From Ranitomeya imitator (Eukaryota): 64,000 bases of DNA. The notes below the pieces were generated by a model, which ran no database searches, was not told where the DNA came from, and was given only the letters and a program-made list of their open reading frames with translations. Shown here piece after piece: positions 40,801-63,539 of this stretch. The stretch's first letter is position 1; each line of letters starts with the position of its first letter. The stretch is taken from positions 10,726,001 through 10,790,000 of the forward strand of contig NC_091290.1 of assembly GCF_032444005.1 (NCBI RefSeq), written 5' to 3'. Made by a program: the position numbers and the translations under genes.

Positions 40801-42790
40801 AGATGTTGGAACTCTTAGCAACTCAATGACCATAGATTGCGTTGGATAAGGCCAATTACGTACTTAGGGGTCAATACTATCAAGACTTGTTTGGATTGAT
40901 CTTTCGGGATCATTGACCTTTTTTGATGGTGGTGGACATTGGCCCAGCATGCTGGAACCCGCAGCCACTCATTGATCATAGATTGCATTGGATAAGGCCC
41001 AGTACTTCATTAGGAATTCGAAGCTATTAAGAAATTTTGGGATTGATATTTGAAGGTCCATGAACTTTTTAGATTATGTTGGACTTTGTGGCTCAGTATG
41101 CTGGAAATCGGAGCCACGTAATGATCGTAGAGTGAGTTGGAAGACCTCATTAGGAGTCAACGCTGAAATTTTTGGACTGACCTTTGGGGGTCAACGATAT
41201 TTTTAGACTGTGTTGGACTTTGGCCCAGCATGCTGAAACTCATAGCCACTCAATGACCATAGATTGTGTTGGATAAGGCCAACAACGTCAATAGGAGTCA
41301 ACGCTATGAAGACCTTTTTAGATTGATGTTTGGTGGTCAATGAACTTTTTAGATGGTGATAACGACTGTGTGGTTCAGCATGCTGGAACTCGTAGCCAAC
41401 CAGTGATCATAGAGTGAGTTGCAGAAGCCTAATGACATCATAAGGGGTCAATACTATTGAGACTTCTTTTGGATTGACCTTTGGGGGGGGAGGCAATGAG
41501 CTTTTTAGTTGTTGGTGGCCTTTGTGGATCATCATGCTGGAAATCAAAGCCACTCGATGACCGTAGAATGAGTTGAATGACCTCATTAGGAGTCAATTCT
41601 ATTAAGAAATTTCTGGAATGACCATTGTGGGCCAATACATTTGTGTTTTTTACGACTTTGTGGGGATGAGGAGGCCAGTATGTGAAAACTTTTAGATGCA
41701 TGACTGCAGTGGAATAAATTGGGACATGGCCAACGTGCACAATCCAAGGGAGGAATTGGCATTGTTATGAGACAGTACTTAAAATTTTTTTTGGGATTTA
41801 TCTTTAAGGGTCACTACTATTAGAAAAAAAATGACCATTGTGAGTTTAGGAACCTTATGGGACTGTTGTGGGCCTACATGGCGGAACTTATAGCTACATG
41901 ACTACAGTAAAGTGAGTTACACCAGGCCTGCGCACAGTCCGAAGGGGGGGGGGAAAAACTCCACGTTGCACCTCTTTGTGATTGAAGTCAAGTTTTAGGT
42001 TGTTCGTAGAATGTTACTTTACATTTGATACCACTGTTTTTGTAGATGAAGCTCGTCACATGGAAATGTCAGTAGAGTAGGTACTGTTGGTCTGGATCGG
42101 ATGGAAGGTGCTCAGTGCCAAAATGAAAAGAAGGCATCAACATCTCAAATGTATCACCGCAAACCAGCTAATGCTCTTACATGGAAAAAAAATATTTAAT
42201 AAAAGCTCAGCTGGGCTCTGCATGCTGCTAAACCAAATCCAAATTGGTAGGGAGTAAGAACTTACAAAAATAATTGAGGGTTAATTTAATTTTTTTATTT
42301 TCTACTGCCAGGATCCACAAGTACGTGGCGCATCCTGTCCAAAAATTCCAGGAATATTTTTGCTTTTATTTTACTGTTTACCTCAAAAACTTCCATATGA
42401 TCTAAAACTTTTTTTTTTCTCTCTCTCCTGGACCAAATGTGATAACGTCCCGGTAATTTTTTACAAAATTTTTATGTGTTTAAGTTTGATTTTTATTTTA
42501 TTTTGCTGGGGCAGCATGTGAACAACTCTTGTTCTCACCTATTGTGACTCCTATAAGGCCAAAGTCTGTTGGTTCATGTTTTAATAGATGGGTAATGTTA
42601 CTTTATTTACAGGTTTTTTTTGTTATTGTTAATTAGCCAATCAGTCAATATTTTTGCATCTTGTTCATGATGGTCGGTCTGAAACGCACATTGTCACCAA
42701 CAGACCGTTATGTAATACATTATATTTTGAATTGAATGACAAAAAAAAAAACTAGGAATAAACCGTACAGAAAAAAACCCAAAACAATTT
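37840..42790 (+). other. ccnd1: Putative long ccnd1 3' UTR with candidate distal poly(A) signal AATAAA at 42757-42762
   Basis: AT-rich sequence after the stop. Blocks at about 38870-38970, 39388-39460 and 39960-40290 resemble the mammalian CCND1 3' UTR as I recall it. The AATAAA is followed by a GU/U-rich tract at about 42789-42810. The 3' end is not proven. Confidence 0.55.
40560..41900. repeat. Old, diverged tandem repeat of about 145-150 bp, about 9 copies
   Basis: The ctattaag-like anchor recurs at 40576, 40730, 40877, 41024, 41304, 41454 and 41599. Confidence 0.75.
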
Positions 42791-43327: not shown

Positions 43328-44676
43328 TTTAAAATTTTGCCTACAGTTACAAATTATCCCTACAAAAATATTAAGTGATAAATGTATGTATGATCAGGTG
43401 GGGAGATCCCTACGGGGCCTGTGTACCCCTGGTGAATGAGACGGCAGTGCTCGTGTGCATTCCCTGACTATCATCATGCACACTAATGCTGCATTCACAT
43501 GAGACTTGTGGACCTCATTTCTAAGGATCTAACAGACCCGAAACAGATCATACATCTATAACCTATCCTGTAGTCTAGATTTGGAATAATCCCTTTAAGA
43601 GAGTTCTATCTTTTCATTTCGCAATTGTGTAATTTTAAGACCTCTCTCTTTTACAGGAGTTATTTTTTTTTGCTTTGAAGCTCCCTCTAATTTTTAGATG
43701 TTTCCCCTAAAAATAAACTGATCGAAGTGTCCTGCCGCTTTGTTAAAATGTGGGAGAACTTGGCAGCAAATGTTAGATTTCTCTGCGGTGACCCTACAGG
43801 AGAAGGTGAGCATCACACCTTTTGAAATCGGTGGGATTTCCGTGTAATGCATATACTTGTTGGGTTCTCCAGAAAGAGGGATAATTTGTCAAATATCCCG
43901 ATCAGGGCCTTCTTCATAATGTGCCCTATCTCAGCATCACGGGTGGTAGCACCACTGAGCTGAGTACTCGACCGCTTCCTGGACTGGGCACGTCATGTTT
44001 TGGCCTCTTAGCATTTTGCCCATCAAATAAGTCACAGACTACGCTGATAATTTTTGGACAGTTTGGCATCTAGAACTGAACAGCCTTGCCAACGTTGTGC
44101 TATCCCTCCTCCTCCCCCGGCGTACGTAGCCACATAAATTAGCGAGTGGGCAGCGGTGAGTGATTGATGCTCCGCTATTTGCCGATACAGGACAGAAAGT
44201 CAGTGGAAAATTAAGTAGACAGAAAATTCCTTGTACCGTAATTCAAAATAATTTTGGGGTCAGATTTAAAGTAATAATCTGGGCAAAAGCTTTAGATTAT
44301 GGTTGTCCTGCAGAGCGAAGGCGCCCGCCTCACCCCAAAGTTTCAATTCCGAACTTAAAGGAACAACAATGGGTGACTTGGGCGCCACCACTCAAGGCAA
44401 TAACTAGGTTCTCCGCTCGTGTCCAGTGTGTCACATTTACAGGGAGGTTTAGAAAAAGTCAAGTACAGACTCATTCAAGTTAGCAAAGAGGTGATCCTCT
44501 ACTGACCAAGTCCTAGCCTGCACGGGGCACTGTCTCAAAACCCTTTACATATGCCCCCTTAAGACTTTAGAAACCATCAGTAGTTCCCACGGACAGATCT
44601 TTATATTCCTATTGTGTCTACAAGTCCTGGTTTACATATAAATGCCTCAATGTGTTGAGCACGACTGCAGAAAATC

Positions 44677-45042
44677 CTAATGTATCCCATATATTATTCC
44701 GAACTTTACACCCTTGTACACTCACAGTACTTAGTTACTAATGTATCCCATGTATTATTCAGAATTTTACACCCTTGTACACTCACAGTACTTAGTTACT
44801 AATGTATCCCATATATTATTCAGAATTTTACACCCTTGTACACTCACAGTACTTAGTTACTAATGTATCCCATGTATTATTCAGAACTTTACACCCTTGT
44901 ACACTCACAGTACTTGGTTACTAATGTATCCCATGTATTATTCAGAATTTTACACCCTTGTACACTCACAGTACTTAGTTACTAATGTATCCCATGTATT
45001 ATTCAGAACTTTACACCCTTGTACACTCACAGTACTTGGTTA
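44677..45042. repeat. 61-bp tandem repeat x6
   Basis: ctaatgtatccc at 44677, 44738, 44799, 44860, 44921 and 44982. Confidence 0.95.
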
Positions 45043-45892
45043 CACTTTTTATGTGTTTTTATTGCGATCAGTAAACTAGCCTGCTCGATTACTGTTTCCG
45101 GTGAGTGGTGTAATGTAGGGGGTTAAAGCACTAATGGATTCTGAGTTTCTTATCGGACCAATATCCAACTATTTGAGCTTTTCAACACATAAATCCGTGC
45201 CCGCTGCCTTATAAGTGAATTATCCTCCAGGGACCTGACAGCTGTGCGGGAGGCGCCTTTCGGGGATTCTTGCCCACACGGGATGCGTGCATTTTTACGC
45301 TGCATCCATGTGATGAGGGGATCACAGACAGAATGTGGAGTATGAAACAAAGTCCTGGAACAGATGAGCGTCTGATAATAAAGATGGGCTCGGTTATTGG
45401 GCAAACCTGGCAGTATTGGGTCAACTTGCCAATTGCTAATTAGATTTTTTTGGGTGCCACAATCATTAGTAAGTGCCCCCTTCACTTCACATTCCATGTT
45501 TCGCCCTTGATCGCCCTACCTATGGCTCTGCTGCCATTCACACTCTGGTAGTCGCTGACTGGGCTTTTCTTACTTTTCCTACAGCGATAATGTCATGTAC
45601 ATCCATTTGACCGCTGCAGACCATCATCAGTCTTGGCATTCCAGCGCTATGCATGCAAGCTTCGATTCAGAGGCCAGTGATTGGCTGCAGCGGTCACATG
45701 GATGTACAGCGCGTTATCTGTGAAAAAGTGAGTCGGATTATCATTTTATAAAATATTTCCTGCCGGAACTTTAAATTTCTTACACTCTTACACAACCCCT
45801 TTAAGATTTGGCTCAGTGAACTTATCCACTGACTGCTGCAGCTGTCACTGAGCAGGTGCAGCAGCATAAAGGGCAGAGATAACTGCTCGCGT

Positions 45893-45925
45893 GCTCCCTC
45901 TGCTGGTCACTGTCTGGAACTGCAG
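45893..45925 (-). promoter_or_regulatory. CTCF motif, core plus upstream (ZF9-11) module
   Basis: Minus strand CTGCAGTTCC-agacag-TGACCAGCAGAGGGAGC. Confidence 0.7.
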
Positions 45926-46262
45926 GACTCAATTTGTGAAAATCGCACATCACACTGTTGCAATTAATTTTCTCGATTCATTTGTTATTTATAGTTTTTT
46001 TTCCACGATTTCATTATTCAGCATCAAATTGGAGACTGAATATGGTTAGATATGCACCGCAGGCGTTGTAATAAATTTGGCGTGTTTCGACCTTTAATCC
46101 ACCTGAGCGTTTTTCATGTTCCTTATCCCTTCAATTTAAAGGGATTTTTCCGATAAGTGATGCCATATGGGGGACCGCTGCTTGTAGTAAAGGGGGCACA
46201 GCGCTAGTTTAGTGCAGCACCCTCTGTATTTCCCTGCACAGTCCCGGGCATCACCATGATAA

Positions 46263-47387
46263 CACTGGTCAACAGCATTTTTGGTGCCAAAGATATTACA
46301 TCGAATTTAGGGTAACTTTGCGGTGCTGATTCTGAATATGTCATCAGTTTTGCCAGATTGGCTCAAGTTTTTGAGATTTTTGGCATCTTATTTATAGCAC
46401 TTGTTGGTAAATGCGACGCATCATCTCATTAATTTCTTTGGATTAGTACTTGAACTGAGCAGTTCTCAATATAGTTTTGTGTTAATTAGTGTTCTAAAAG
46501 TTTGTTCATAGCTTGATTTTTGCACTAACTTTATGTTGTTGTCTGTTTTCCAGTGAAAAGCATGAACTCATCAAGAAGAAGTTGTCTTAACGATCCAGAC
46601 TCATTCTGTTACATTTGTGGTGAATACACACTGCCAAAACATAGAAGAAACATAACAGACTTCGTAAAAAAAGTGTATTTTGCCTATTTTGGGGTTATGC
46701 TTGGGGACCAAGACAAGTTTTGGGCACCACACATAGTGTGCAAAGCATGTATCGAATTATTACGAAAATGGAGCAAAGGACAAAGAAAAAGCTTCAAATT
46801 TGGTGTTCCAATGGTGTGGAGAGAGCAAAAAAATCATCATGATGACTGTTATTTCTGTGCAGTGCAAGTGCAAGGATTCAATAAGCATAAGAAACGAAAA
46901 TGGGAGTATCCTAACATGGAATCTGCAAGAAGGCCTGTCCCTCATTGTGAAGATGTGCCTGTACCTGTGTTTACCATGTTACCTGACCTTCCCCCACCTG
47001 ATGATGATGAAATGTGTATTCACCACAAATGTAACAGAATGAGTCTGGATCGTTAAGACAACTTCTTCTTGATGAGTTCATGCTTTTCACTGGAAAACAG
47101 ACAACAACATAAAGTTAGTGCAAAAATCAAGCTATGAACAAACTTTTAGAACACTAATTAACACAAAACTATATTGAGAACTGCTCAGTTCAAGTACTAA
47201 TCCAAAGAAATTAATGAGATGATGCGTCGCATTTACCAACAAGTGCTATAAATAAGATACCAAAAATCTCAAAAACTTGAGCCAATCTGGCAAAACTGAT
47301 AGCATATTCAGAATCAGCACCCCAAAAATACCCCAAATTCATTAAAATATTTTGGACACCAGAAAAAAAATTTTTTGTTGTTGACCA
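46263..47387 (+). mobile_element. Non-autonomous DNA transposon derivative, probably Chapaev3 group (CMC), with internal 309-bp fold-back
   Basis: Left end taa|CACTGGTCAACA and right end TGTTGACCA. Transposase N-terminus with CYICG, WAPHIVCKAC, PMVWRE..NHHDDCYFC and YP..ESARRPVPH motifs. Superfamily assignment is from recall only. Confidence 0.75.
46562..47012 (+). pseudogene. Truncated transposase N-terminus (Cys/His-rich zinc-finger-like region), no catalytic domain
   Basis: ATG at 46562 preceded by an acceptor-like ttttccag. After 47012 the frame enters the inverted duplicate and stops at 47056. Confidence 0.75.
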
Positions 47388-47597
47388 AACTGATGGCGTA
47401 TTCTAAGTGGAGTAAAGAAAATGGCGCAAATCCACATGTGATCATCATTTAGCGCTGCACCACCTTCTACATTTTCAGAGCACAATGATCGACCTGGTCA
47501 CCTGGCTGTGCCCTATTCAATAAAAAGGACCTGCAGAGCAGTACTGCAGCATTTTTTCCACACCTGCCTAAAACTTTTGCTCAGTGCTGTTTATATA

Positions 47598-49170
47598 TGC
47601 TGCTCAAAAACATAAAGGGGACACAAACAACAGAATAGAATTCAGAGTAAATCAAACTTCTGTGAAATCAAACTGTCCACTTAGGAAGTAGCACTGCTGA
47701 CAATCAATCTCACATGCTGTTGTGCAAATGGAATAGACAACAGATGGAAATTATTGGCGATTATTAAGACACCAGCAATAAAGGAGCGGTTCTGCAGGTG
47801 GGGACCACAGACCACATCTCAGTACCAATGCTTTCTGGCTGATGTTTTGGTCATTTTTAAATGTTGGTCGTGCTTTCAAACTCGTGGTAACATGAGACGG
47901 ACTCTACAACCCACACAAGTAGCTCAGGTAGTGCAGCTCATCCAGGATGGCACATCAATGTGAGCTGTGGCACGTCTGTTTGCTGTGTCTGTCAGCGTAG
48001 TGTCCAGAGGCTGGAGGCGCTACCAGGAGACAGGCCAGTACACTAGGAGACGTGGAGGGGGCCGTAGGAGGGCAACAACCCAGCAGTAGGACCGCTACCT
48101 CCGCCTTTGTGCAAGGAGGAAAAGGAGGAGCACTGCCAGAGCCCTGCAAAATGACCTCCAGCAGGCCACAAATGTGCATGTGTCTGTACAATCAGTTAGA
48201 AACCGACTTCATGAGGATGGTCTGAGTGCCCGACATCCACAGATGGGGTTTGTGCTCACAGCCCAACACCGTGCAGAATGCTTGGCATTTGCCACAGAAC
48301 ACCAGAATTGGCAAATTCACCACTGGCGCCCTGTGGTCTTCACAGATGAAAGCAGGTTCACACTGAGAACATGTGACAGACGTGACAGCATGGAGACTCC
48401 GTGGAGAGCGATCTGCTGCCTGCAACATCCTTCAGCATGACCGGTTTGGCAGTGGGTCAGTAATGGTGTGGGGTGGCATTTCTTTGGCGGGACGCACAGC
48501 CCTCCATGTGCTCGCCAGAGGTAGCCTGACTTCCATTATGTACCGGGATGAGATCCTCAGACCCCTTGAGAGATCATATGATGGTGCGGTTGGCCCTGGG
48601 TTCCTCCTAATGCAGGACAATGCCAGACCTCATGTGGCTGGAGTGTGTCAGCAGTTCCTGCAAGATGAAGGCATTGAAGCTATGGACTGGTCCGCGCGTT
48701 CCCCAGACCTGAATCCAATTGAGCACATCTGGGACATCATGTCTCACTCCATCCACCAACGTCACGTTGCACCACAGACTGTCCAGGAGTTGGCGGATGC
48801 TTTAGTCCAGGTCAGGGAGGAGATCCCTCAGGAGACCATCCGCCGCCTCATCAGGAGCATGCCCAGGCGTTGTAGGGAGATCATACAGGCACGTGGAGGC
48901 CACACACACTACTGAGCATCATTTCCTTGTCTTGAGGCATTTCCACTGAAGTTGGATAAGCCTGTAACTTCATTTTCCACTTTGATTTTGAGCATCATTC
49001 CAACTCCAGACCTCCGTGGGATATTAGTTGTGATTTACATTGATCATTTTTAGGTTTTATTGTTCTCAATACATTCCACTATGTAATGAATAAAGATTTA
49101 CAGCTGGAATATTTCATTCAGTGATATCTAGGATGTGGGATTTAGTGTTCTCTTTATTTTTTGGGCAGTG
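47598..49170 (+). mobile_element. Full-length but decayed Tc1 (DD34E) transposon, about 1.57 kb
   Basis: TA|..CTGCTCAAAAACATAAAGGGGACAC ... GTGTTCTCTTTATTTTTTGGGCAGTG|TA. Confidence 0.93.
47892..48915 (+). pseudogene. Tc1 transposase pseudogene
   Basis: [23 protein letters not shown] start; motifs FTDES, MVWGGIS, QDNARPH and SPDLNPIEHIW. Two in-frame stops early and a frameshift near 48385. Confidence 0.92.
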
Positions 49171-50301
49171 TATATATCCCTGCACACAATACGGACATAA
49201 ACAGGCTCTACGTTATACACACATCTGCACGGCGTTCTGTCCATGTGAATGAGGCCTTATTCTCTGCATTATTCTTCCTCGCCCGCCATGCGGCAGCTGC
49301 AGCCGCTCATCTCTGGGAGAAGAGGAATTCTTTCTTCCTTCGACCTCTGGGGACTTTTTCTTGCAATTCCATTGTAAGATGTCGGGGCCGGAGAACAATG
49401 GCGGCGTGTGTTTCTATACTGGTGCTGGTGCAGGCGGCTCAGGCCATGTGACACCGTATACAGTGTTTTGTCATCTTAGGAATGCCTTTGATCAGGAGTT
49501 TTTGCAAGAGAGGAAAGAAAAAAAAAACTGAAACTCTAATCCGTTCCCACAGTCCACTAAACGTGAGCTGGACCAACACTGGACAATGGCAGCGAGGCTT
49601 TGTGCCGGGACAATAGGACCCTCAATATTACCCGGCCCCCGACTCGCCCCGCCGCTCACTAAACTCTTGTATTCCCCATAAAAAAAAACTTTAATTCTAG
49701 AGGATTTTTTGTATAAATTTGCATTGGTTAGTCCCTCTGTTATTCCTCCTGGAAATATAAGAACAACTGTACAGAGGATGTGACCTCCTCATTCTGACAT
49801 TCACGGCTGATCGCTAGAAGATCCGGTCAGAAGACACTTTTTGGAAACCCTCCTAGCAAGTGTCCAAAACCCTTTTTAAAAAATTATTTCAATATTTCAC
49901 AGTCTCTTTTTTTTGTAGCAGGAACCCCTTAAAATAAAATGATCATCTGTAACCTGGAAATAAGGGAGCACTTTTCCTGCAGCGCCTCCAGAGGAGAATA
50001 GAAGGACTGCATGCCGCATGCAATGCCGGGTCCTCCAGAGAAAGAGACGCTCTTTGTAGTCGTGCTAGATTTTGGCTAATTAATCGAGCGGAAATAGGGG
50101 GTGATTTAGGGACCCTCAGCTGTCAGCTCGGAGGAGGGGCACCACTTTAGCCCCTTGGTGTACACATATAAGCTCCATGCAGATATTCGCCATGGTCAAT
50201 GCTAATCAATGAGTCCCTATAGGACGCCTATGTTTCATGGGCCGCCATTGTGACTTCTGTTTTCACTCAATTTCCGGTATTGTCTAATGAACATCAGGGC
50301 A

Positions 50302-51645
50302 GCGAGTGGGCAGTTTAGAGTGGAGTGAATGGGCAGATCGGAGGGGAGCGAGTGGGCAGATCGGAGGGGAGCGAGTGGGCAGATTGGAGGAGAGCGAGTG
50401 GGCAGATCGGAGGGGAGCGAGTGGGCAGATTGGAGGCGAGCGAGTGGGCAGTTCGGAGGGAAGAGAGTGGGCAGGTCGGAGGAGAGCGAGTGGGCATATC
50501 GGAGGAGAGCGAGTGGGCAGATCGGAGGGGAGCGAGTGGGCAGATCGGAGGAGAGCGAGTGGGAGATCGGAGGAGAGCGAGTGGGCAGATCGGAGGGAAG
50601 CGAGTGGGCAGATCGGAGGGAAGCGAGTGGGCAGATCGGAGGGGAGCGGGTGGGCAGATCGGAGGGGAGCGGGTGGGCAGGTCGGAGGGGAGCGAGTGGG
50701 CAGGTCGGAGGGGAGCGAGTGGGCAGGTCTGAGGAGGGGAGCGAGTGGGCAGGTCGGAGGGGAGCGAGTGGGCAGATCGGAGGGGAGCGAGTGGGCAGAT
50801 CGGAGGGGAGCGAGTGGGCAGATCAGAGGGAAGCGAGTGGGCAGATCGGAGGGGAGCGGGTGGGCAGATCGGAGGGGAGCGGGTGGGCAGGTCGGAGGGG
50901 AGCGAGTGGGCAGGTCGGAGAGGAGCGAGTGGGCAGATCGGAGGGAAGCGAGTGGGCAGATCGGAGGGGAGCGGGTGGGCAGATCGGAGGGGAGCGGGTG
51001 GGCAGGTCGGAGGGGAGCGAGTGGGCAGGTCGGAGGGGAGCGAGTGGGCAGATCGGAGGGGAGCGAGTGGGCAGGTCGGAGGGGAGCGGGTGGGCAGGTC
51101 AGAGGGGAGCGAGTGGGCAGATCGGAGGGGAGCGAGTGGGCAGGTCGGAGGGGAGCGAGTGGGCAGATCGGAGGGGAGCGGGTGGGCAGGTCGGAGGGGA
51201 GCGAGTTGGCAGATCAGAGGTGATCAGAGTGGAGTGAGCAGGCAGATCGGAGGTGAGAGGTCAGGCAGATCAGAGTGGAGCGATCGGACAGATCAAGGGT
51301 ATGGAACGGGCAGATAGGAGGGGAGCGATCGGACAGATCGGAGGGGAGCGAACGGGCAGATCGGAGGGAGGGGTAGGGCAGATCGGAGGGGAGTGAGCGG
51401 GCAGATCGGAGGGGAGCGAACGGGCAGATAGGAGGGGAGCGAATGGGCAGATCGGAGGGAGGGGTAGGGCAGATCGGAGGGGAGTGAACGGGCAGATCGG
51501 AGGGAGAGGTAGGGCAGATCGGAGGGGAGTGAACGGGCAGATCGGAGGGAGGGGTAGGGCAGATCGGAGGGGAGTGAACGGGCAGATCGGAGGGAGGGGT
51601 AGGGCAGATCGGAGGGGAGTGAGCGGGCAGATCGGAGGGGAGCGT
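50302..51645. repeat. Purine/G-rich 22-23 bp minisatellite (GGGCAGATCGGAGGGGAGCGAGT)
   Basis: Tandem units visible; alternating about 45-bp dimers after about 51280. Confidence 0.95.
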
Positions 51646-52541
51646 CAGCCATTGTATCAGCAGGAATGCTGCGGCTGACATCTTGGTTTTCTGTCTGACT
51701 CCATTGTTTAGATAGGGCCGTACAAGTCGTTACAGAGCCGCGGTCTTTTCACTATTGTCATCACGTCTTTCGTGTTCCTCGCACTTTCGCATAGATTTTA
51801 CTGTCGCTCCTGTGACAACTGGAAGGGAATGAATCCGTTCTTCTAAGCTAATACAATTTGCTACAAATTTTCACACAAAATTTGGATTCTGATGGTCGAC
51901 GATGTTGGTCGCGCTCCAACATGTGACCGTGTGAGGCCTGGTCACTGGAAAGACACCGGAGAGGTACGAGGGGAGCGGGCCGAGGAAGAGAAGAGATTAC
52001 CATTTTATTTAACTCTTCCTGCCAGATTAGATTCCCGCTGAACTCATCTCTGACCCCTGAAATGAGCGAATCTGCAGAATTAAATTTCGCTCAACCCTAG
52101 TTCCATCATATCTGAAGAAGCGTCTCCATACAGCCGGGTAACGATGGGTCCGGGACATGAGCCGAAATGCACAGCCCCAATATCCTCTAATGTGAACATG
52201 GCCGAGGCCACGGCCGTCTCCCGGCAGAGCGAGGGCCGATCCCCAGAGCCGGGATTGCGTCCTTCAGCATGAAGCTGCGCTGTATATAGGTGGTCCGGCG
52301 GGCAGGACACAACAGAAGTGGTCAGCGCCTTCCAGTGCCACATCCTTTAACCTCTGCATTACATTTTTGGAATGGCAGCTCAGATCCAATGAAGTGAATA
52401 GTTTTTGGAGAAATAATTCACGCTTTCGCTGCCTGCACCACCCCTTTAAGATGGAGGTATTGTAGGATCCTCATGGTGCTCCAAACCCAGTTGAGTTTGA
52501 GTCCAGAATAATAATGGCTGGGATGCAGAGCATTTTTGTTT

Positions 52542-56693: not shown

Positions 56694-56970
56694 CTGGAAA
56701 ACGCCAGAAATGATAAGATTAACTGACAACCCTCCTCAGATCCATCATTACCTGACACTAAACATCACGGCAGAGGAAAAACAGAACGACCAAAACACTA
56801 CAAGCACCAAACGGTGAAGTGATAACATCGACTATCAGGCAACAACGGCGCCAGTCAGCGGAGAGAGATATAAGGCAGCAAGGGATCGGTCAGATCTCAA
56901 AGAGGAGGCAGGAAAAATGAGCAAGCGGCAAAATGTGATGGCTCCATGGCTGAGTCAGAGCATCTCTAAA

Positions 56971-58308
56971 ATGGGGTGTTCACGGTATACGGCAGGTCTT
57001 GTGGGGTGTTCCCAGTATACGGCAGGTCTTGTGGGGTGTTCCCAGTATACGGCAGGTCTTGTGGGGTGTTCCCAGTATATGACAGGTCTTGTGGGGTGTT
57101 CCCAGTATACGGCAGGTCTTGTGGGGTGTTCCTGGTATACGGCAGGTCTTGTGGGGTGTTCCCAGTATATGGCAGGTCTTGTGGGGTGTTCCCAGTATAT
57201 GGCAGGTCTTGTGGGGTGTTCCCAGTATACGGCAGGTCTTGTGGGGTGTTCCCGGTATACGGCAGGTCTTGTGGGGTGTTCACGGTATACGGCAGGTCTT
57301 GTGGAGTGTTCCTGGTATACGGCAGGTCTTGTGGGGTGTTCCCAGTATATGGCAGGTCTTGTGGGGTGTTCCTGGTATACGGCAGGTCTTGTGGGGTGTT
57401 CCCAGTATATGGCAGGTCTTGTGGGGTGTTCCCAGTATATGGCAGGTCTTGTGGGGTATTCCTGGTATACGGCAGGTCTTGTGGGGTGTTCCCAGTATAT
57501 GGCAGGTCTTGTGGGGTGTTCCCAGTATACGGCAGGTCTTGTGGGATGTTCACGGTATACGGCAGGTCTTGTGGGGTGTTCCCAGTATATGGCAGGTCTT
57601 GTGGGATGTTCACGGTATACGGCAGGTCTTGTGGGGTGTTCCCAGTATATGGCAGGTCTTGTGGGGTGTTCCCAGTATATGGCAGGTCTTGTGGGGTATT
57701 CCTGGTATACGGCAGGTCTTGTGGGATGTTCCCAGTATATGGCAGGTCTTGTGGGATGTTCACGGTATACGGCAGGTCTTGTGGGGTGTTCCCAGTATAC
57801 GGCAGGTCTTGTGGGGTGTTCCCAGTATACAGCAGGACTTGTGGGGTGTTCCCAGTATACGGCAGGTCTTGTGGGGTGTTCCCAGTATATGGCAGGTCTT
57901 GTGGGATGTTCACGGTATATGGCAGGTCTTGTGGGGTGTTCCCAGTATATGGCAGGTCTTGTGGAGTCTTCCCAGTATATGGCAGGTCTTGTGGGGTGCT
58001 CCTGGTATACGGCAGGTCTTGTGGGGTGTTCCCAGTATATGGCAGGTCTTGTGGGATGTTCACGGTATACGGCAGGTCTTGTGGGGTGTTCCCAGTATAT
58101 GGCAGGTCTTGTGGGATGTTCACGGTATACGGCAGGTCTTGTGGGGTGTTCCCAGTATATGGCAGGTCTTGTGGGATGTTCACGGTATACGGCAGGTCTT
58201 GTGGAGTGTTCCCAGTATATGGCAGGTCTTGTGGGATGTTCACGGTATACGGCAGGTCTTGTGGAGTGTTCCCAGTATATGGCAGGTCTTGTGGGGTGTT
58301 CCTGGTAT
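56971..58308. repeat. 30-bp tandem array (GGGGTGTTCCCAGTATAYGGCAGGTCTTGT), about 44 copies, in lto1 intron 2
   Basis: Exact 30-nt period. Confidence 0.98.
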
Positions 58309-58404
58309 GTGTGTAGTAGTTAGTATCTACTAATCTACCAAAATTGGTCCAAGGATGGGAGATGGTTTTAATATTATGGCTAACCACAATATATTGCAAT
58401 ACGG

Positions 58405-58735
58405 AGACGCACAGGCGCAGGGGATGCACAGGCGCGGGGGACGCAGAGGTGCGGGGGACGCACAGGTGTAGGGGTCACACAGGTGTAGGTGTAGCACAGG
58501 TGCGGGGCACAGTAGACGCAGAGGCGCGGGGGTCGCACAGGTGTAGGTGTTGCACAGGTGCGGGGGACGCACAGGTGTAGGGGTCACAGGTGTAGGGGTC
58601 GCACAGGTGTAGGTGTTGCACAGGTGCGGGGGACGCACAGGTGTAGGGGTCACACAGGTGTAGGGGTCGCACAGGTGTAGGTGTTGTACAGGTGCGGGGC
58701 ACAGTAGACGCAGAGGCGCGGGGGGCGCACAGGTC
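58405..58735. repeat. Degenerate about 16-17 bp minisatellite (gcacaggtgtaggggtc)
   Basis: Tandem variants visible. Confidence 0.8.
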
Positions 58736-59844: not shown

Positions 59845-60661
59845 AGTTTCTTGGTGGTGTGTGAGCATGTTCCTACAGACTTGTTCACTGTGCGAGTAGC
59901 CCATGTGTTCCTGTTTCCAGCATGTAAGGGCATGTAGGCTGCAGTTTGCTCCAGAGCAGCGCTCTTGGTCACCTGACTGTGGAGAGCAGTGGGCCGCATT
60001 CACTTACATGAGCATGAACTCACCAGCCGTACAGGAGAGGGATCTGACAGTAAACCAGCGCTGCATTCTCAGAAATGGTAATAATATCCTGTAAGAAGAA
60101 AGGACTGGGCATATCTAAAATCCAACATGCCTGATCCTTCATTCACAAGATCACCTGAGAGCCATGACACCACCGTCAGTTGTAATCGGCAACTTCAGTG
60201 AACTTTGGTCTAATGTTTAAGGAGCTGATGTAATTGCAGCAAACCCCCAGCTGGAAAAAGAGGTACTGCCAACATTTCTACCAATGAAGTGAATGGAAAG
60301 TGTGTGTAACAGTGCGGGGTCACACGGCAGAGATATGCAGCGTCACCTGACTCATCACATTACACAGCTCCTATAGAATGCAGCCGTCGCTGGGCACGTA
60401 AGACGTGTGCAATGTGCGGAGCGGAGCCGCACGTCCGGGTCTGCAGAGCAGCAGGAATAGATCTGCAATGTAATGGAGGTTTCTGGCTTCATGAAAAGCA
60501 CAGAATAAGAGATAAAGTGCTGATTACTAGGGGGTCCGACCGCTGGAACCCCCACAACCTGGCTACGACAGGGGATGCTGCGCATGCGCCCAATCACTGT
60601 CTGTTGGATGCGAGTGCAGCTCTCTTCTAACAGGGGGCTCTGGAGTCCCATTATGGGCATC

Positions 60662-63015
60662 AATGGGGGTCCCAGTGGTCAGACCTCTAGTAATCAGCCA
60701 GTTATGGCCCAGCATCAGTGGGGGTCCCAGTGGTCACACCTCTAGTAATCAGCCAGTTATGGCCCAGCATCAGTGGGGGGTCCCAGTGGTCAGACCTCTA
60801 GTAATCAGCCAGTTATCACCCATCATCAGTGGGGGTCCCAGTGGTCAGACCTCTAGTAATCAGCCAGTTATTGCCCGTCATCAGTGGGGGGTCCCAGTGG
60901 TCAGACCTCTAGCAATCAGCCAGTTATCGCCCATCATCAGTGGGGGTCCCAGTGGTCAGACCTCTAGTAATCAGCCAGTTATCGCCCAGCATCAGTGGGG
61001 GTCCCAGTGGTCAGACCTCTAGTAATCAGCCAGTTATCGCCCAGCATCAGTGGGGGTCCCAGTGGTCAGACCTCTAGTAATCAGCCAGTTATCACCCATC
61101 ATCAGTGGGGGTCCCAGTGGGCAGACCTCTAGTAATCAGCCAGTTATCGCCCAGCATCAGTGGGGGTCCCAGTGGTCAGACCTCTAGTAATCAGCCAGTT
61201 ATCGCCCAGCATCAATGGGGGTCCCAGTGGTCAGACCTCTAGTAATCAGCCAGTTATTGCCCACCATCAGTGGGGGTCCCAGTGGTCACACCTCTAGTAA
61301 TCAGCCAGTTATTGCCCGTCATCAGTGGGGGGTCCCAGTGGTCAGACCTCTAGTAATCAGCCAGTTATCACCCATCATCAGTGGGGGTCCCAGTGGTCAG
61401 ACCTCTAGTAATCAGCCAGTTATTGCCCGTCATCAGTGGGGGTCCCAGTGGTCAGACCTCTAGCAATCAGCCAGTTATCGCCCATCATCAGTGGGGGTCC
61501 CAGTGGTCAGACCTCTAGTAATCAGCCAGTTATCGCCCAGCATCAGTGGGGGTCCCAGTGGTCAGACCTCTAGTAATCAGCCAGTTATCGTCCAGCATTA
61601 GTGGGGGTCCCAGTGGTCAGACTTCTAGTAATCAGCCAGTTATCGCCCAGCATCAGTGGGGGTCCCAGTGGGCAGACCTCTAGTAATCAGCCAGTTATCG
61701 CCCAGCATCAGTGGGGGTCCCAGTGGGCAGACCTCTAGTTATCAGCCAGTTATCGTCCAGCATCAGTGGGGGTCCCAGTGGGCAGACCTCTAGTAATCAG
61801 CCAGTTATCACCCATCATCAGTAGGGGTCCCAGTGGTCAGACCTCTAGTAATCAGCCAGTTATCGCCCATCATCAGTGGGGGTCCCAGTGGGCAGACCTC
61901 TAGTAATCAGCCAGTTATCGCCCATCATCAGTGGGGGTCCCAGTGGTCAGACCTCTAGTAATCAGCCAGTTATCGCCCATCATCAGTGGGGGTCCCAGTG
62001 GTCAGACCTCTAGTAATCAGCCAGTTATCGCCCATCATCAGTGAGGGTCCCAGTGGTCAGACCTCTAGTAATCAGCCAGTTATTGCCCAGCATCAGTGGG
62101 GGTCCTAGTGGTCAGACCTCTAGTAATCAGCCAGTTATCACCCATCATCAGTGGGGGTCCTAGTGGTCAGACCTCTAGTAATCAGCCAGTTATCACCCAT
62201 CATCAGTAGGGGTCCCAGTGGTCAGACCTCTAATAATCAGCCAGTTATCGCCCATCATCAGTGGGGGTCCCAGTGGTCAGACCTCTAGTAATCAGCCAGT
62301 TATCACCCATCATCAGTGGGGTCCCAGTGGTCAGACCTCTAGTAATCAGCCAGTTATCACCCATCATCAGTGGGGGTCCCAGTGGTCAGACCTCTAGTAA
62401 TCAGCCAGTTATCGCCCATCATCAGTGGGGGTCCCAGTGGTCAGACCTCTAGTAATCAGCCAGTTATCGGCCGGTATCAGTGGGGTCGCAGTGGTCAGAC
62501 CTCTAGTAATCAGCCAGTTATCGCCCATCATCAGTGGGGTCCCAGTGGTCAGACCTCTAGTAATCAGCCAGTTATCGGCCGGTATCAGTGGGGTCCCAGT
62601 GGTCAGACCTCTAGTAATCAGCCAGTTATCGGCCGGTATCAGTGGGGTCCCAGTGGTCAGACCTCTAGTAATCAGCCAGTTATCGGCCGGTATCAGTGGG
62701 GTCCCAGTGGTCAGACCTCTAGTAATCAGCCAGTTATCGGCCGGTATCAGTGGGGTCCCAGTGGTCAGACCTCTAGTAATCAGCCAGTTATCGGCCGGTA
62801 TCAGTGGGGTCCCAGTGGTCAGACCTCTAGTAGTCAGCCAGTTATCGGCCGGTATCAGTGGGGTCCCAGTGGTCAGACCTCTAGTAGTCAGCCAGTTATC
62901 GGCCGGTATCAGTGGGGTCCCAGTGGTCAGACCTCTAGTAATCAGCCAGTTATCGGCCGGTATCAGTGGGGTCGCAGTGGTCAGACCTCTAGTAGTCAGC
63001 CAGTTATCACCCATC
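60662..63015. repeat. 54-55 bp tandem array (GGGGGTCCCAGTGGTCAGACCTCTAGTAATCAGCCAGTTATCGCCCATCATCAGT), about 43 copies, in lto1 intron 1
   Basis: 55-nt period; the distal units are 54 nt, which explains the 62370-63128 ORF. Confidence 0.98.
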
Positions 63016-63539
63016 ATCATCATCATCATCATGTCCAGAGCGAGTCACCTGCGACGGCGCCTCCATCATATCCGTGTTACGTCCGTGACACCACAGAAAT
63101 CGTCAGATGTGACGACTCCGGCTACTAAGTGACACTAGTGAGGCGGCATCGGCTCTAATGATTCCTGACACAGGATCACTAATCTTCCCAATGTGCTGGA
63201 TTTTCTTGCATTATTGCATTTGTGCCTTTTTTCTATTTTTTTTAATGTTTTTCCTCTACGCCTTTTTTTTTTAAATCTCTTTTACGCCTTCCCCTGCGGC
63301 CCCGGAGCACACTGAACTTTGTGAGTTCTCGCCCTTTCCAGTACCTGAGCTTGCTGTCAGTGAATGGAAACACAACAATGCCAGCTCCACTGCAAAAAAA
63401 AAAAAAAATAATAATAATAGATGTTTCTAATTTCTAGCCACTGCAGCAAGCAGATATCCTGAAACAGTAGGGGGAAGTATATTACAGACGTGCAGAACTT
63501 CCTGTTTCCACATCCGTGCTGTGGGGGTCACTCAGGAAG

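What the first reader, a model, noticed from the sequence alone, without database searches (positions are those of the whole stretch)
46263..47387. Fold-back transposon able to make a 309-bp hairpin against its own family (Mu-killer-like architecture)
Seen: the element keeps both termini (CACTGGTCAACA...TGTTGACCA) and about 150 codons of transposase. At 47013 it switches into a near-perfect inverted copy of its own 5' region. The arms are 46322-46630 and 47013-47321, only a few mismatches are visible, and the spacer is 382 bp. The arms cover the 5' non-coding region, the acceptor-like site and the first about 23 codons. Known: maize Mu killer is an inverted partial duplication of MuDR whose read-through hairpin RNA silences the family in trans. 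Inference: this locus lies between two convergent genes, about 3.5 kb past the candidate ccnd1 poly(A) site. Read-through could yield dsRNA/endo-siRNA against an active family. The Chapaev3 assignment rests on recalled motifs and CAC termini.
Basis: partly seen in the sequence, partly recalled or inferred. Interest (0 to 1): 0.7.

Follow-up and report, generated by a model that had tools for sequence, protein, structure and literature searches.

The report
Fold-back remnant of a Chapaev3 transposon
This is a real 1.1-kb broken copy of a young frog "Chapaev3" jumping gene whose back half was replaced by a mirror copy of its own front, most likely a DNA-repair by-product, and nothing yet shows that it silences its family.

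Summary
The inverted repeat is real. The arms are 46278-46630 and 47013-47365. Their inner 309 nt are 99% complementary, their outer ~45-80 nt are diverged, and the loop is 382 nt. An intact ORF runs 150 codons to the 47012/47013 junction.

The Chapaev3 assignment now rests on tests:
- Metagenome elements encoding homologous full-length transposases end in the same CACTGGTCAACA.
- Those elements carry TTA/TAA target duplications.
- The window's left end reads A|TAA|CACTGGTCAACA.

The right end lacks the invariant terminal GTG, so this copy is probably immobile.

Public contigs, including cDNA and poly(A) libraries, hold a non-fold-back form that is 98.5-100% identical, so the family is young and its RNA is present. 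No listed contig crosses the fold-back junction. No run holds more of the element's sampled words than the non-fold-back form alone explains. RNA-library contigs do not cover the unique right flank.

Another first-stage note on other DNA of this genome describes a 1141-letter Chapaev-like fold-back. I could not check it, so a few copies may exist.

Best reading: a low-copy fold-back deletion derivative made by template switching during gap repair. It can form a long hairpin RNA (-670 kcal/mol), but a Mu killer-like function is unshown.

The parts
46259..46262 (.). Left flank A + TAA: the putative target-site duplication in the A|TWA context
   Evidence: Sequence. Chapaev3 elements make TWA duplications and insert between A and T (PMC4079192). 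Relatives show TTA/TAA on both sides.
46263..46321 (+). Left terminus CACTGGTCAACA plus the diverged outer subterminal region
   Evidence: The 12 terminal nt are identical to the termini of metagenome relatives (L005, L014, L028-L034). This stretch is about 73% alike to the right outer part, with indels. Its 31-letter words are not explained by the public non-fold-back contig.
46322..46630 (+). Left arm, inner part: 5' non-coding region (to 46561) and codons 1-23
   Evidence: 309 nt with 3 mismatches to the reverse complement of 47013-47321.
46562..47056 (+). Open reading frame: 150 codons of the transposase N-terminal zinc domain, 14 junk codons from the inverted arm, then a stop
   Evidence: Homologues: 3827 cluster representatives, best 71%. 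The model has pLDDT 90 with a ZAD-like zinc module. The catalytic domain is entirely absent.
46631..47012 (+). Loop/spacer: codons 24-150, single copy within the element
   Evidence: 382 nt between the arms. 0 mismatches to the X1 and X3 contigs.
47012..47015 (.). The novel junction, where coding sequence switches to the inverted 5' region, with a possible 2-nt (TG) microhomology
   Evidence: The non-fold-back contigs of X1 and X15 match through 47014 and then run on unlike, while the arm starts at 47013. No listed contig bridges it.
47013..47321 (-). Right arm, inner part: inverted copy of the 5' non-coding region and codons 1-23
   Evidence: 0 mismatches to the X1 contig read on the minus strand.
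47322..47386 (-). Right outer subterminal region and truncated terminus (...GTTGACC, terminal WGTG missing)
   Evidence: Other copies read GTTGACCTGTG then TAATA(G) (X3 and X15 loose ends). Relatives end in ...GTG plus TWA. The window has GTTGACC|AAACTG.
47387..47545 (.). Right flank, not part of the element. It is present in run X7 on a contig that lacks the element.
   Evidence: X7 record 23 (703 nt, depth 19) matches only 47387-47545, with 279 unlike letters before it. It may be an empty site, orthologous or paralogous.

Best explanation
This is a non-autonomous, low-copy fold-back deletion derivative of a young Chapaev3 (CMC superfamily) DNA transposon in a frog-like genome. It keeps one complete terminus, the 299-nt 5' non-coding region and the first 150 codons (a ZAD-like zinc domain only). 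Everything downstream, including the whole catalytic domain, is replaced by an inverted copy of the element's own 5' region, which joins a differently built terminal stretch. The most likely origin (inferred) is abortive gap repair after excision or a replication error. A nascent strand primed in one terminal inverted repeat switched to the homologous repeat at the other end, copied the 5' region in reverse, and was joined at a 2-nt microhomology. The right end has lost the invariant GTG, so this copy is probably a dead end for transposition. If transcribed from outside, or from the two inward-facing copies of the element's own 5' region, it would give a ~350-bp hairpin or double-stranded RNA matching the family's 5' end. 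That step and any silencing effect are not shown. I treat the locus as a repair by-product with latent dsRNA potential, not as a demonstrated silencer.
For: Structure. Chapaev3 identity: the hallmarks are given in PMC4079192. Full-length homologues P0056 and P0139 carry the same N-terminal domain plus CFLC, PPLH and HFLHSH motifs. Metagenome elements of 2.1-2.7 kb encoding such proteins end in CACTGGTCAACAAA with TTA/TAA duplications. The window's left end is A|TAA|CACTGGTCAACA. The long arms are derived: none of the 44 related loci has an inverted copy of its own 5' region, and their terminal repeats are short. A non-fold-back form exists and is near-identical. The X1 contig (1381 nt) has 0 mismatches over 742 nt, then runs on for 624 unlike letters past 47014. 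The X15 poly(A)-RNA contig does likewise, with 6 mismatches in 415 nt. Low copy number: the X1 depth is flat, meaning one contig and no separate junction contig. X3 contigs stop at 47011 and 47013. The best sampled-word share of any of 20 holder runs is 0.84, against 0.858 expected from the non-fold-back contig alone. Truncated right terminus. Precedent for the mechanism: the mosquito MITE Goblin has long TIRs made of inversely duplicated subterminal sequence, explained by gap repair with template switching at the TIR (PMC3814204). Hairpin potential: minimum free energy -670.7 kcal/mol with both arms fully paired.
Against: A first-stage note (s1-295322) describes a Chapaev-like fold-back of almost the same length (1141 letters) elsewhere in this genome. 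If it shares the junction, the form has transposed at least once and is a small family. Which outer end is the native 5' end is unresolved. The X1 contig links the right-outer type to the 5' UTR and coding sequence. Yet in 7 of 8 relatives, including the closest (L004), the end with the longer A/T spacer is the 3' end, which would make the window's left end the 5' type. An X3 contig joins 47014 to 47258 (depth 34, side 33). It may be a further derivative sharing the left breakpoint, which would mean the lineage is not single-copy in that organism. The microhomology is only 2 nt, with a chance expectation of about 1 in 16. Logan contigs drop rare variants, so absence of the junction is weak evidence. 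The source assembly's own reads were not available.
Confidence: 0.68

Rival explanations
1. It is a Mu killer-like natural silencer. The locus is transcribed through both arms, by read-through from ccnd1 or from the element's own duplicated 5' regions. The hairpin is diced into small RNAs that repress the active Chapaev3 family in trans.
For: The architecture matches Mu killer (PMC3440606 abstract) and the maize Ac composite insertions, whose inverted duplications are transcribed from the Ac promoter or a flanking promoter and trigger siRNAs and heritable silencing (bioRxiv 10.1101/2020.01.07.897926). The arms are near-perfect and target the 5' end of a family that is young and present in RNA libraries. 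The predicted hairpin is very stable. ccnd1 lies upstream on the same strand.
Against: There is no RNA evidence for this locus. No listed contig crosses the junction, and depth is zero over the unique flank 47393-47514 in the cDNA/RNA libraries X1 and X15. No small-RNA data could be examined. From my own knowledge, vertebrate germlines rely mainly on piRNAs, and efficient endo-siRNA production from long hairpins is documented mainly in mouse oocytes. The candidate ccnd1 poly(A) signal lies 3.5 kb upstream.
Confidence: 0.08
2. It is one member of an amplified non-autonomous (MITE-like) long-TIR subfamily. The fold-back arose once, was mobilised by the autonomous transposase, and exists in many copies sharing the junction.
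For: Note s1-295322: a second Chapaev-like fold-back of 1141 letters on another piece of the same genome. Chapaev3 families do spawn MITEs (PMC4079192). The X3 joint 47014->47258 may be a derivative with the same left breakpoint. Run X7 shows a very high copy number of family parts.
Against: No listed contig in four runs bridges the junction. No run exceeds the word share expected from the non-fold-back form. There is no second copy in the 64-kb window. This copy lacks one terminus.
Confidence: 0.2
3. It acts as a truncated-transposase repressor. The intact 164-codon ORF makes only the N-terminal ZAD-like zinc domain, which poisons or competes with the full transposase, as the KP protein does for the P element (comparison from my own knowledge).
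For: The ORF is intact, with 0 differences from the X1 contig over the spacer. The domain is strongly conserved and folds confidently. Its closest solved folds are ZAD domains, which I know as dimerisation modules.
Against: The ORF may be intact simply because the copy is young. Any mRNA would have its 5' leader and start codon buried in the hairpin. There is no expression evidence. The ZAD similarity is weak (E 0.4-2; Pfam hits below cut-off).
Confidence: 0.03
4. It is an assembly artefact: a chimeric fold-back read or a mis-join created the inversion.
For: Palindromic chimeras are a known long-read artefact (my own knowledge). No independent read set spanning the inversion could be laid.
Against: The arms differ at 3 inner places and in their whole outer parts. 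The element sits between unique flanks with a proper A|TAA|CAC left boundary. A similar element is reported elsewhere in the genome.
Confidence: 0.03

Closest known systems
Chapaev3 transposons (CMC superfamily; the Merrow/Garfield/Conan families and their MITEs, PMC4079192)
   Same: A 5'-CAC terminus. A TAA flank preceded by A. An N-terminal domain homologous to that of full-length transposases carrying the C(2)C, LH and H(4)H motifs. A terminal 12-mer identical to relatives that show TWA duplications. A single-exon gene with a ~300-nt leader.
   Different: The described non-autonomous Chapaev3 elements are plain internal deletions. This one carries a 309-353-nt inverted copy of its own 5' region, keeps no catalytic domain, and lacks the 3'-most GTG.
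Maize Mu killer (PMC3440606) and the Ac composite insertions (bioRxiv 10.1101/2020.01.07.897926)
   Same: [quoted passage not shown] It can fold into a long hairpin RNA that targets the family.
   Different: Those loci are shown to be transcribed, to yield siRNAs and to silence heritably through plant RNA-directed DNA methylation. None of this is shown here, and the host is a vertebrate without that pathway. The arms here are ~0.35 kb, against a ~4-kb hairpin RNA for Mu killer.
Goblin MITE of Aedes aegypti, derived from the Tc1/mariner element Ozma (PMC3814204)
   Same: A non-autonomous derivative whose lengthened inverted repeats are inversely duplicated subterminal sequence of the parent. 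It is explained by gap repair with template switching at the terminal repeat and microhomology at the break.
   Different: Goblin is a different superfamily. It is a short (54-bp TIR), amplified family with 6-bp microhomology. Here the arms are ~350 nt, the microhomology is 2 nt, part of the ORF is kept, and the copy number appears low.
Foldback (FB/NOF) elements
   Same: A hairpin-shaped element with long inverted arms.
   Different: As I know them, FB arms are built of tandem subrepeats and belong to a Mutator-like group. Here the arms are unique 5' sequence of a Chapaev3 element, with no direct repeats found.

Membership tests
Chapaev3 (CMC superfamily) | Invariable 5'-CAC ... GTG-3' termini | tested here: inconclusive
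   Left end CACTGGTCAACA is present at 46263. The right end stops at ...GTTGACC(A) without GTG. Other family copies and relatives have it, so this looks like a truncation in this copy and not a family difference.
Chapaev3 (CMC superfamily) | 3-bp TWA target-site duplication, inserted between A and T | tested here: inconclusive
   The left flank is A|TAA. The right duplication is not recognisable in this copy. Another family copy reads GTG|TAA|T (X15 and X3 loose ends). Relatives L003, L004, L005, L007, L014 and L028-L034 have matching TTA or TAA on both sides.
Chapaev3 (CMC superfamily) | DDE transposase with C(2)C, LH and H(4)H motifs | tested here: inconclusive
   This copy has no catalytic domain. 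Its N-terminal 130 residues match (47-50% identity, E 1e-33 to 1e-39) the N-termini of 560-568-aa proteins P0056 and P0139, which contain CFLC, PPLH and HFLHSH. No comparison with curated Repbase Chapaev3 proteins was possible. Pfam has no model for them.
Chapaev3 (CMC superfamily) | Terminal sequence shared with elements that encode the homologous transposase | tested here: met
   CACTGGTCAACA is identical in the window and in L005, L014 and L028-L034, with one or two changes in L007 and L004.
Mu killer-type silencer locus | Inverted duplication of the 5' terminal region and the start of the transposase gene of an autonomous element | tested here: met
   A non-fold-back form exists in public contigs.
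Mu killer-type silencer locus | Transcription through both arms giving a hairpin RNA | tested here: inconclusive
   No listed contig in the cDNA/RNA libraries X1 and X15 crosses 47012/47013 or covers the flank 47393-47514. Contigs cannot show absence, and no raw reads were available.
Mu killer-type silencer locus | Small RNAs from the arms and heritable trans-silencing of the family | not testable with these tools
   No small-RNA data or genetics were at hand.
Amplified MITE-like non-autonomous family | Many homogeneous copies sharing the same internal junction, each with its own target duplication | tested here: inconclusive
   There is none in the window. The junction is not seen in the listed contigs of 4 runs, and word shares fit the non-fold-back form only. 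One possible second copy is reported by note s1-295322 (unchecked). The source genome could not be searched.
Foldback (FB) elements | Arms composed of tandem subrepeats | tested here: not met
   No direct-repeat families were found in 45500-48200.

The most novel reading that the evidence does not exclude
A vertebrate counterpart of maize Mu killer. In this reading the fold-back copy arose spontaneously and is transcribed from its two inward-facing copies of the transposon's own 5' region or by ccnd1 read-through. It would supply hairpin or double-stranded RNA that seeds small-RNA silencing of a currently active Chapaev3 family in a frog. That would make it a natural record of how a genome first 'recognises' a newly invading DNA transposon.
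Probability: 0.07. Interest if true: 0.75.

Novelty: new member of a known kind. Interest (0 to 1): 0.3.

Why it matters
How a genome first recognises a newly active DNA transposon is well documented only in plants, through Mu killer and the Ac composite insertions. A young, transcribed Chapaev3 family in a frog, with a fresh fold-back copy of its 5' end, is the right raw material to ask whether the same route works in a vertebrate. It is testable with small-RNA and stranded RNA data from one species. As it stands, the locus is a clean example of a known by-product of transposon gap repair. It also gives a tested Chapaev3 annotation (termini, target site, 5' leader, N-terminal domain) for this genome.

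Tried and rejected
DNA around related proteins in eukaryotic assemblies could not be fetched, and the exact fold-back ORF could not be looked up.
2. An exact 24-mer from the spacer found nothing in the JGI metagenome contigs, so those contigs hold no frog copies of this family.
3. The search of earlier findings by sequence and by relatives gave blanks.
4. Pfam gave only sub-threshold zinc-finger hits for the ORF and nothing for the long homologues. Rfam found no family in 44000-49500.
5. I looked for paralogous copies of the flanks inside the window to reconstruct the empty site and found none.
6. I tried to decide which outer end is the native 5' end. The public contig evidence and the analogy with relatives disagree, so the question is left open.
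7. I laid only 46600-48400, leaving out the left arm on purpose because read laying turns away stretches with a long repeat. As a result the left flank and left terminus were not examined in reads, and the putative empty-site contig of X7 could not be checked against the left flank.
8. The short-sided joints in X7 (sides of 22-28 letters) were not used as evidence.
9. A splice-acceptor role for the ...TTTTCCAG site was rejected. Relatives have unspliced ~300-nt leaders, and the X1 cDNA contig is colinear with the DNA there.

Full report
**Observation**

The region 46263-47387 was read and scanned for repeats.

- The arms are 46278-46630 and 47013-47365: 353 nt, 96% complementary without gaps, with 382 nt between them.
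- The 15 mismatches in that register are unevenly placed. Twelve lie in 46281-46321, three at 46341, 46342 and 46384, and none in 46385-46630.
- A gapped alignment shows that the outermost ~60 nt also differ by indels. The left end reads CACTGGTCAACAGCATTTTTGGTGCC. The right end, reverse-complemented, reads TGGTCAACAACAAAAAATTTTTTTTCTGGTGTCC.
- The ORF starts at ATG 46562. It reaches the inner end of the arm after codon 23 (46630) and the junction after codon 150 (47011/47012). It then reads 14 codons of inverted arm to a stop at 47054-47056.
- No second copy lies in the window.
- As RNA, the whole element folds into one long hairpin of -670.7 kcal/mol.
- Rfam finds no known RNA family here.

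**Which transposon**

The 150-residue product has 3827 relatives at E<=0.001 among cluster representatives. The best relative of similar length is 71% identical, an uncharacterised protein of the amphisbaenian Rhineura floridana. Pfam gives only sub-threshold zinc-finger hits.

Full-length homologues P0056 (560 aa) and P0139 (568 aa) have the same N-terminal domain. It is followed by a region containing CFLC, PPLH and HFLHSH. These are the C(2)C, LH and H(4)H motifs that PMC4079192 gives as characteristic of Chapaev transposases.

That paper also states the Chapaev3 hallmarks:
- CAC...GTG termini.
- A TWA target duplication.
- Insertion between an A and a T.

I tested these on 44 metagenome loci that encode relatives of P0056. 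Elements of 2.1-2.7 kb end in CACTGGTCAACAAA or near variants. They are flanked by matching TTA or TAA:
- L005 2714-4869
- L007 3646-5788
- L014 3697-5806
- L028-L033 (L028: 3690-5831)
- L003 153-2364
- L004 455-2693

The window's left end is A|TAA|CACTGGTCAACA, with the same terminal 12-mer. The ~300-nt leader also matches the relatives, so no splice acceptor needs to be invoked. The Chapaev3 assignment is therefore supported by tests. One caveat remains: curated Repbase proteins could not be compared.

**The right terminus is damaged**

Other copies of the family seen in public contigs read ...GTTGACC TGTG followed by TAATA(G) (loose ends of X3 and X15). The window reads ...GTTGACC|AAACTGATGG. 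Three to five nucleotides, including the invariant GTG, are missing, and perhaps part of the duplication as well. The exact placement is ambiguous. This terminal sequence is conserved across relatives whose transposases share only 35-60% amino-acid identity with this ORF or with P0056. I therefore infer that this copy can no longer be mobilised.

**What public runs hold**

Twenty runs from 13 studies hold part of the stretch, with a best share of sampled words of 0.84. I laid 46600-48400 on four runs. I left the left arm out on purpose, because read laying turns away stretches with a long repeat.

- **X1.** A loose end carrying what I recognise from memory as the SMART template-switch oligo marks this as a cDNA library. 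A single 1381-nt contig covers the element. It equals the reverse complement of 47370..47013 joined to 46631..47014 with 0 mismatches. It then runs on for 624 letters unlike the window. This is a non-fold-back form. The flat depth shows there is no separate junction contig.
- **X15.** This is a poly(A) RNA library. A 775-nt contig shows the same colinear 5' region and coding sequence, with 6 mismatches in 415 nt. It has 112 unlike letters beyond 47014.
- **X3.** Contigs end at 47011 and start at 47013.
- **X7.** About 33,000 contigs hit the stretch. They fall on the element and on the Tc1-like repeat from 47.6 kb.

The words of the X1-type contig alone account for 0.858 of the element's 31-mers. 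The missing words are the left outer part, the junction and the extreme right end. No run exceeds that share. So the family is young, abundant and present in RNA libraries. This copy's junction and left outer part are not abundant anywhere that is indexed. The unique flank 47393-47514 has zero depth in X1, X3 and X15. Contigs show presence only, so none of this proves absence.

**Copy number**

The scan's notes list one other item: 'Chapaev-like transposon turned into a foldback element by copying its own 5' end', 1141 letters, on another piece of this genome (s1-295322). There is also a fold-back hAT derivative (s1-307446). I could not read either sequence. The near-equal length suggests a second copy of the same derivative.

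An X3 contig joins 47014 to 47258 (depth 34). It might be a further derivative with the same left breakpoint. I therefore rate 'low-copy, one to a few' as most likely. A larger family is a live rival.

**Origin (inferred)**

None of the 44 related loci has an inverted copy of its own 5' region, and their terminal repeats are short. The arms are therefore a derived feature of this element.

The pattern has three parts: near-perfect inner arms, unlike outer ends, and a junction with a possible TG overlap. The overlap is suggested because both non-fold-back contigs match through 47014 while the arm starts at 47013. This pattern fits gap repair or replication with a template switch inside the terminal-repeat homology. 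The same model was proposed for the mosquito MITE Goblin, whose long TIRs are inversely duplicated subterminal sequence (PMC3814204).

Which end is chimeric is unresolved. X1 links the right-outer type to the 5' UTR and coding sequence. By analogy with 7 of 8 relatives, including the closest (L004, 59% identity), the end with the longer A/T spacer should be the 3' end. On that analogy the window's right end is the 3' end.

**Function**

The resemblance to Mu killer (PMC3440606) and to the Ac composite insertions is architectural only.

Both arms carry the element's own 5' region. If that region holds the promoter, the two copies face inward. They would give convergent transcripts over codons 24-150 without any read-through from ccnd1. 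ccnd1 itself lies upstream on the + strand. Its last coding exon ends near 37.85 kb and there is an AATAAA at 42757 (the motifs were recalled from memory and serve as a lead only). No datum here shows transcription of this locus or small RNAs from it.

**The N-terminal domain**

AlphaFold with 43 sequences gives pLDDT 89.9. The nine best PDB matches are all Drosophila ZAD domains, though weakly so (E 0.4-2, TM 0.39-0.59 on the target). Pfam zf-AD reaches 26.8 bits in P0139, against a cut-off of 28. A truncated ZAD-like protein acting as a repressor is conceivable but unsupported.

**Verdict**

This is a real, well-defined fold-back deletion derivative of a young Chapaev3 family. The structure and the family assignment are confirmed, and the silencing role is unshown. 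It is a new member of a known kind, of modest interest unless small-RNA data show otherwise.

Noticed in passing
window 46562-47011 (protein); P0056, P0139: The conserved N-terminal domain of these Chapaev3-type transposases is not in Pfam. It folds confidently (pLDDT 90), and its first zinc module resembles the arthropod ZAD (zinc-finger-associated) domain. The nine top Foldseek PDB hits are all ZAD domains, and zf-AD scores 26.8 bits in P0139. This may be an evolutionary link between ZAD and a transposase domain.
   Followed up: partly
window 47546-48915: A Tc1-like transposon lies on the + strand, with ORFs carrying a DDE-type transposase C-terminus (...LLMQDNARPH...). Summed contig depth is very high in run X7. 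It starts 160 nt to the right of the fold-back.
   Followed up: no
window 47387-47545: The short flank between the two transposons lies in run X7 on a 703-nt contig (depth 19) that lacks both neighbours. It may be an empty site or part of an older moderately repeated element.
   Followed up: no
window 47383-47403 vs 47289-47309 (and 46334-46355): The first ~21 nt across and beyond the truncated right terminus are ~81% alike to a subterminal stretch of the arms (pair I3). This may be chance, or a trace of how the terminus was lost.
   Followed up: no
window 45569-45732: A small imperfect palindrome (arms 45586-45626 / 45678-45718, 83%) lies in the left flank and looks like a MITE.
   Followed up: no
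window 50300-51700, 56900-58450, 60650-63130: Long open frames of repeated peptide units on both strands indicate three satellite-like tandem arrays downstream of the element.
   Followed up: no
L025 4001-4889, L026 1952-2840, L040 197-1387, L041 627-1817: Metagenome relatives whose match to residues 5-547 of the transposase spans only 0.9-1.2 kb. These are plain internal-deletion derivatives, showing that deletion is common in this group while fold-back copies were not seen.
   Followed up: no
Read-laying run X3, joint 47014->47258: A contig (depth 34 in a 17-million-letter run) joins the end of the spacer to the last 129 nt of the right arm. It may be a shorter derivative sharing the fold-back's left breakpoint.
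   Followed up: no
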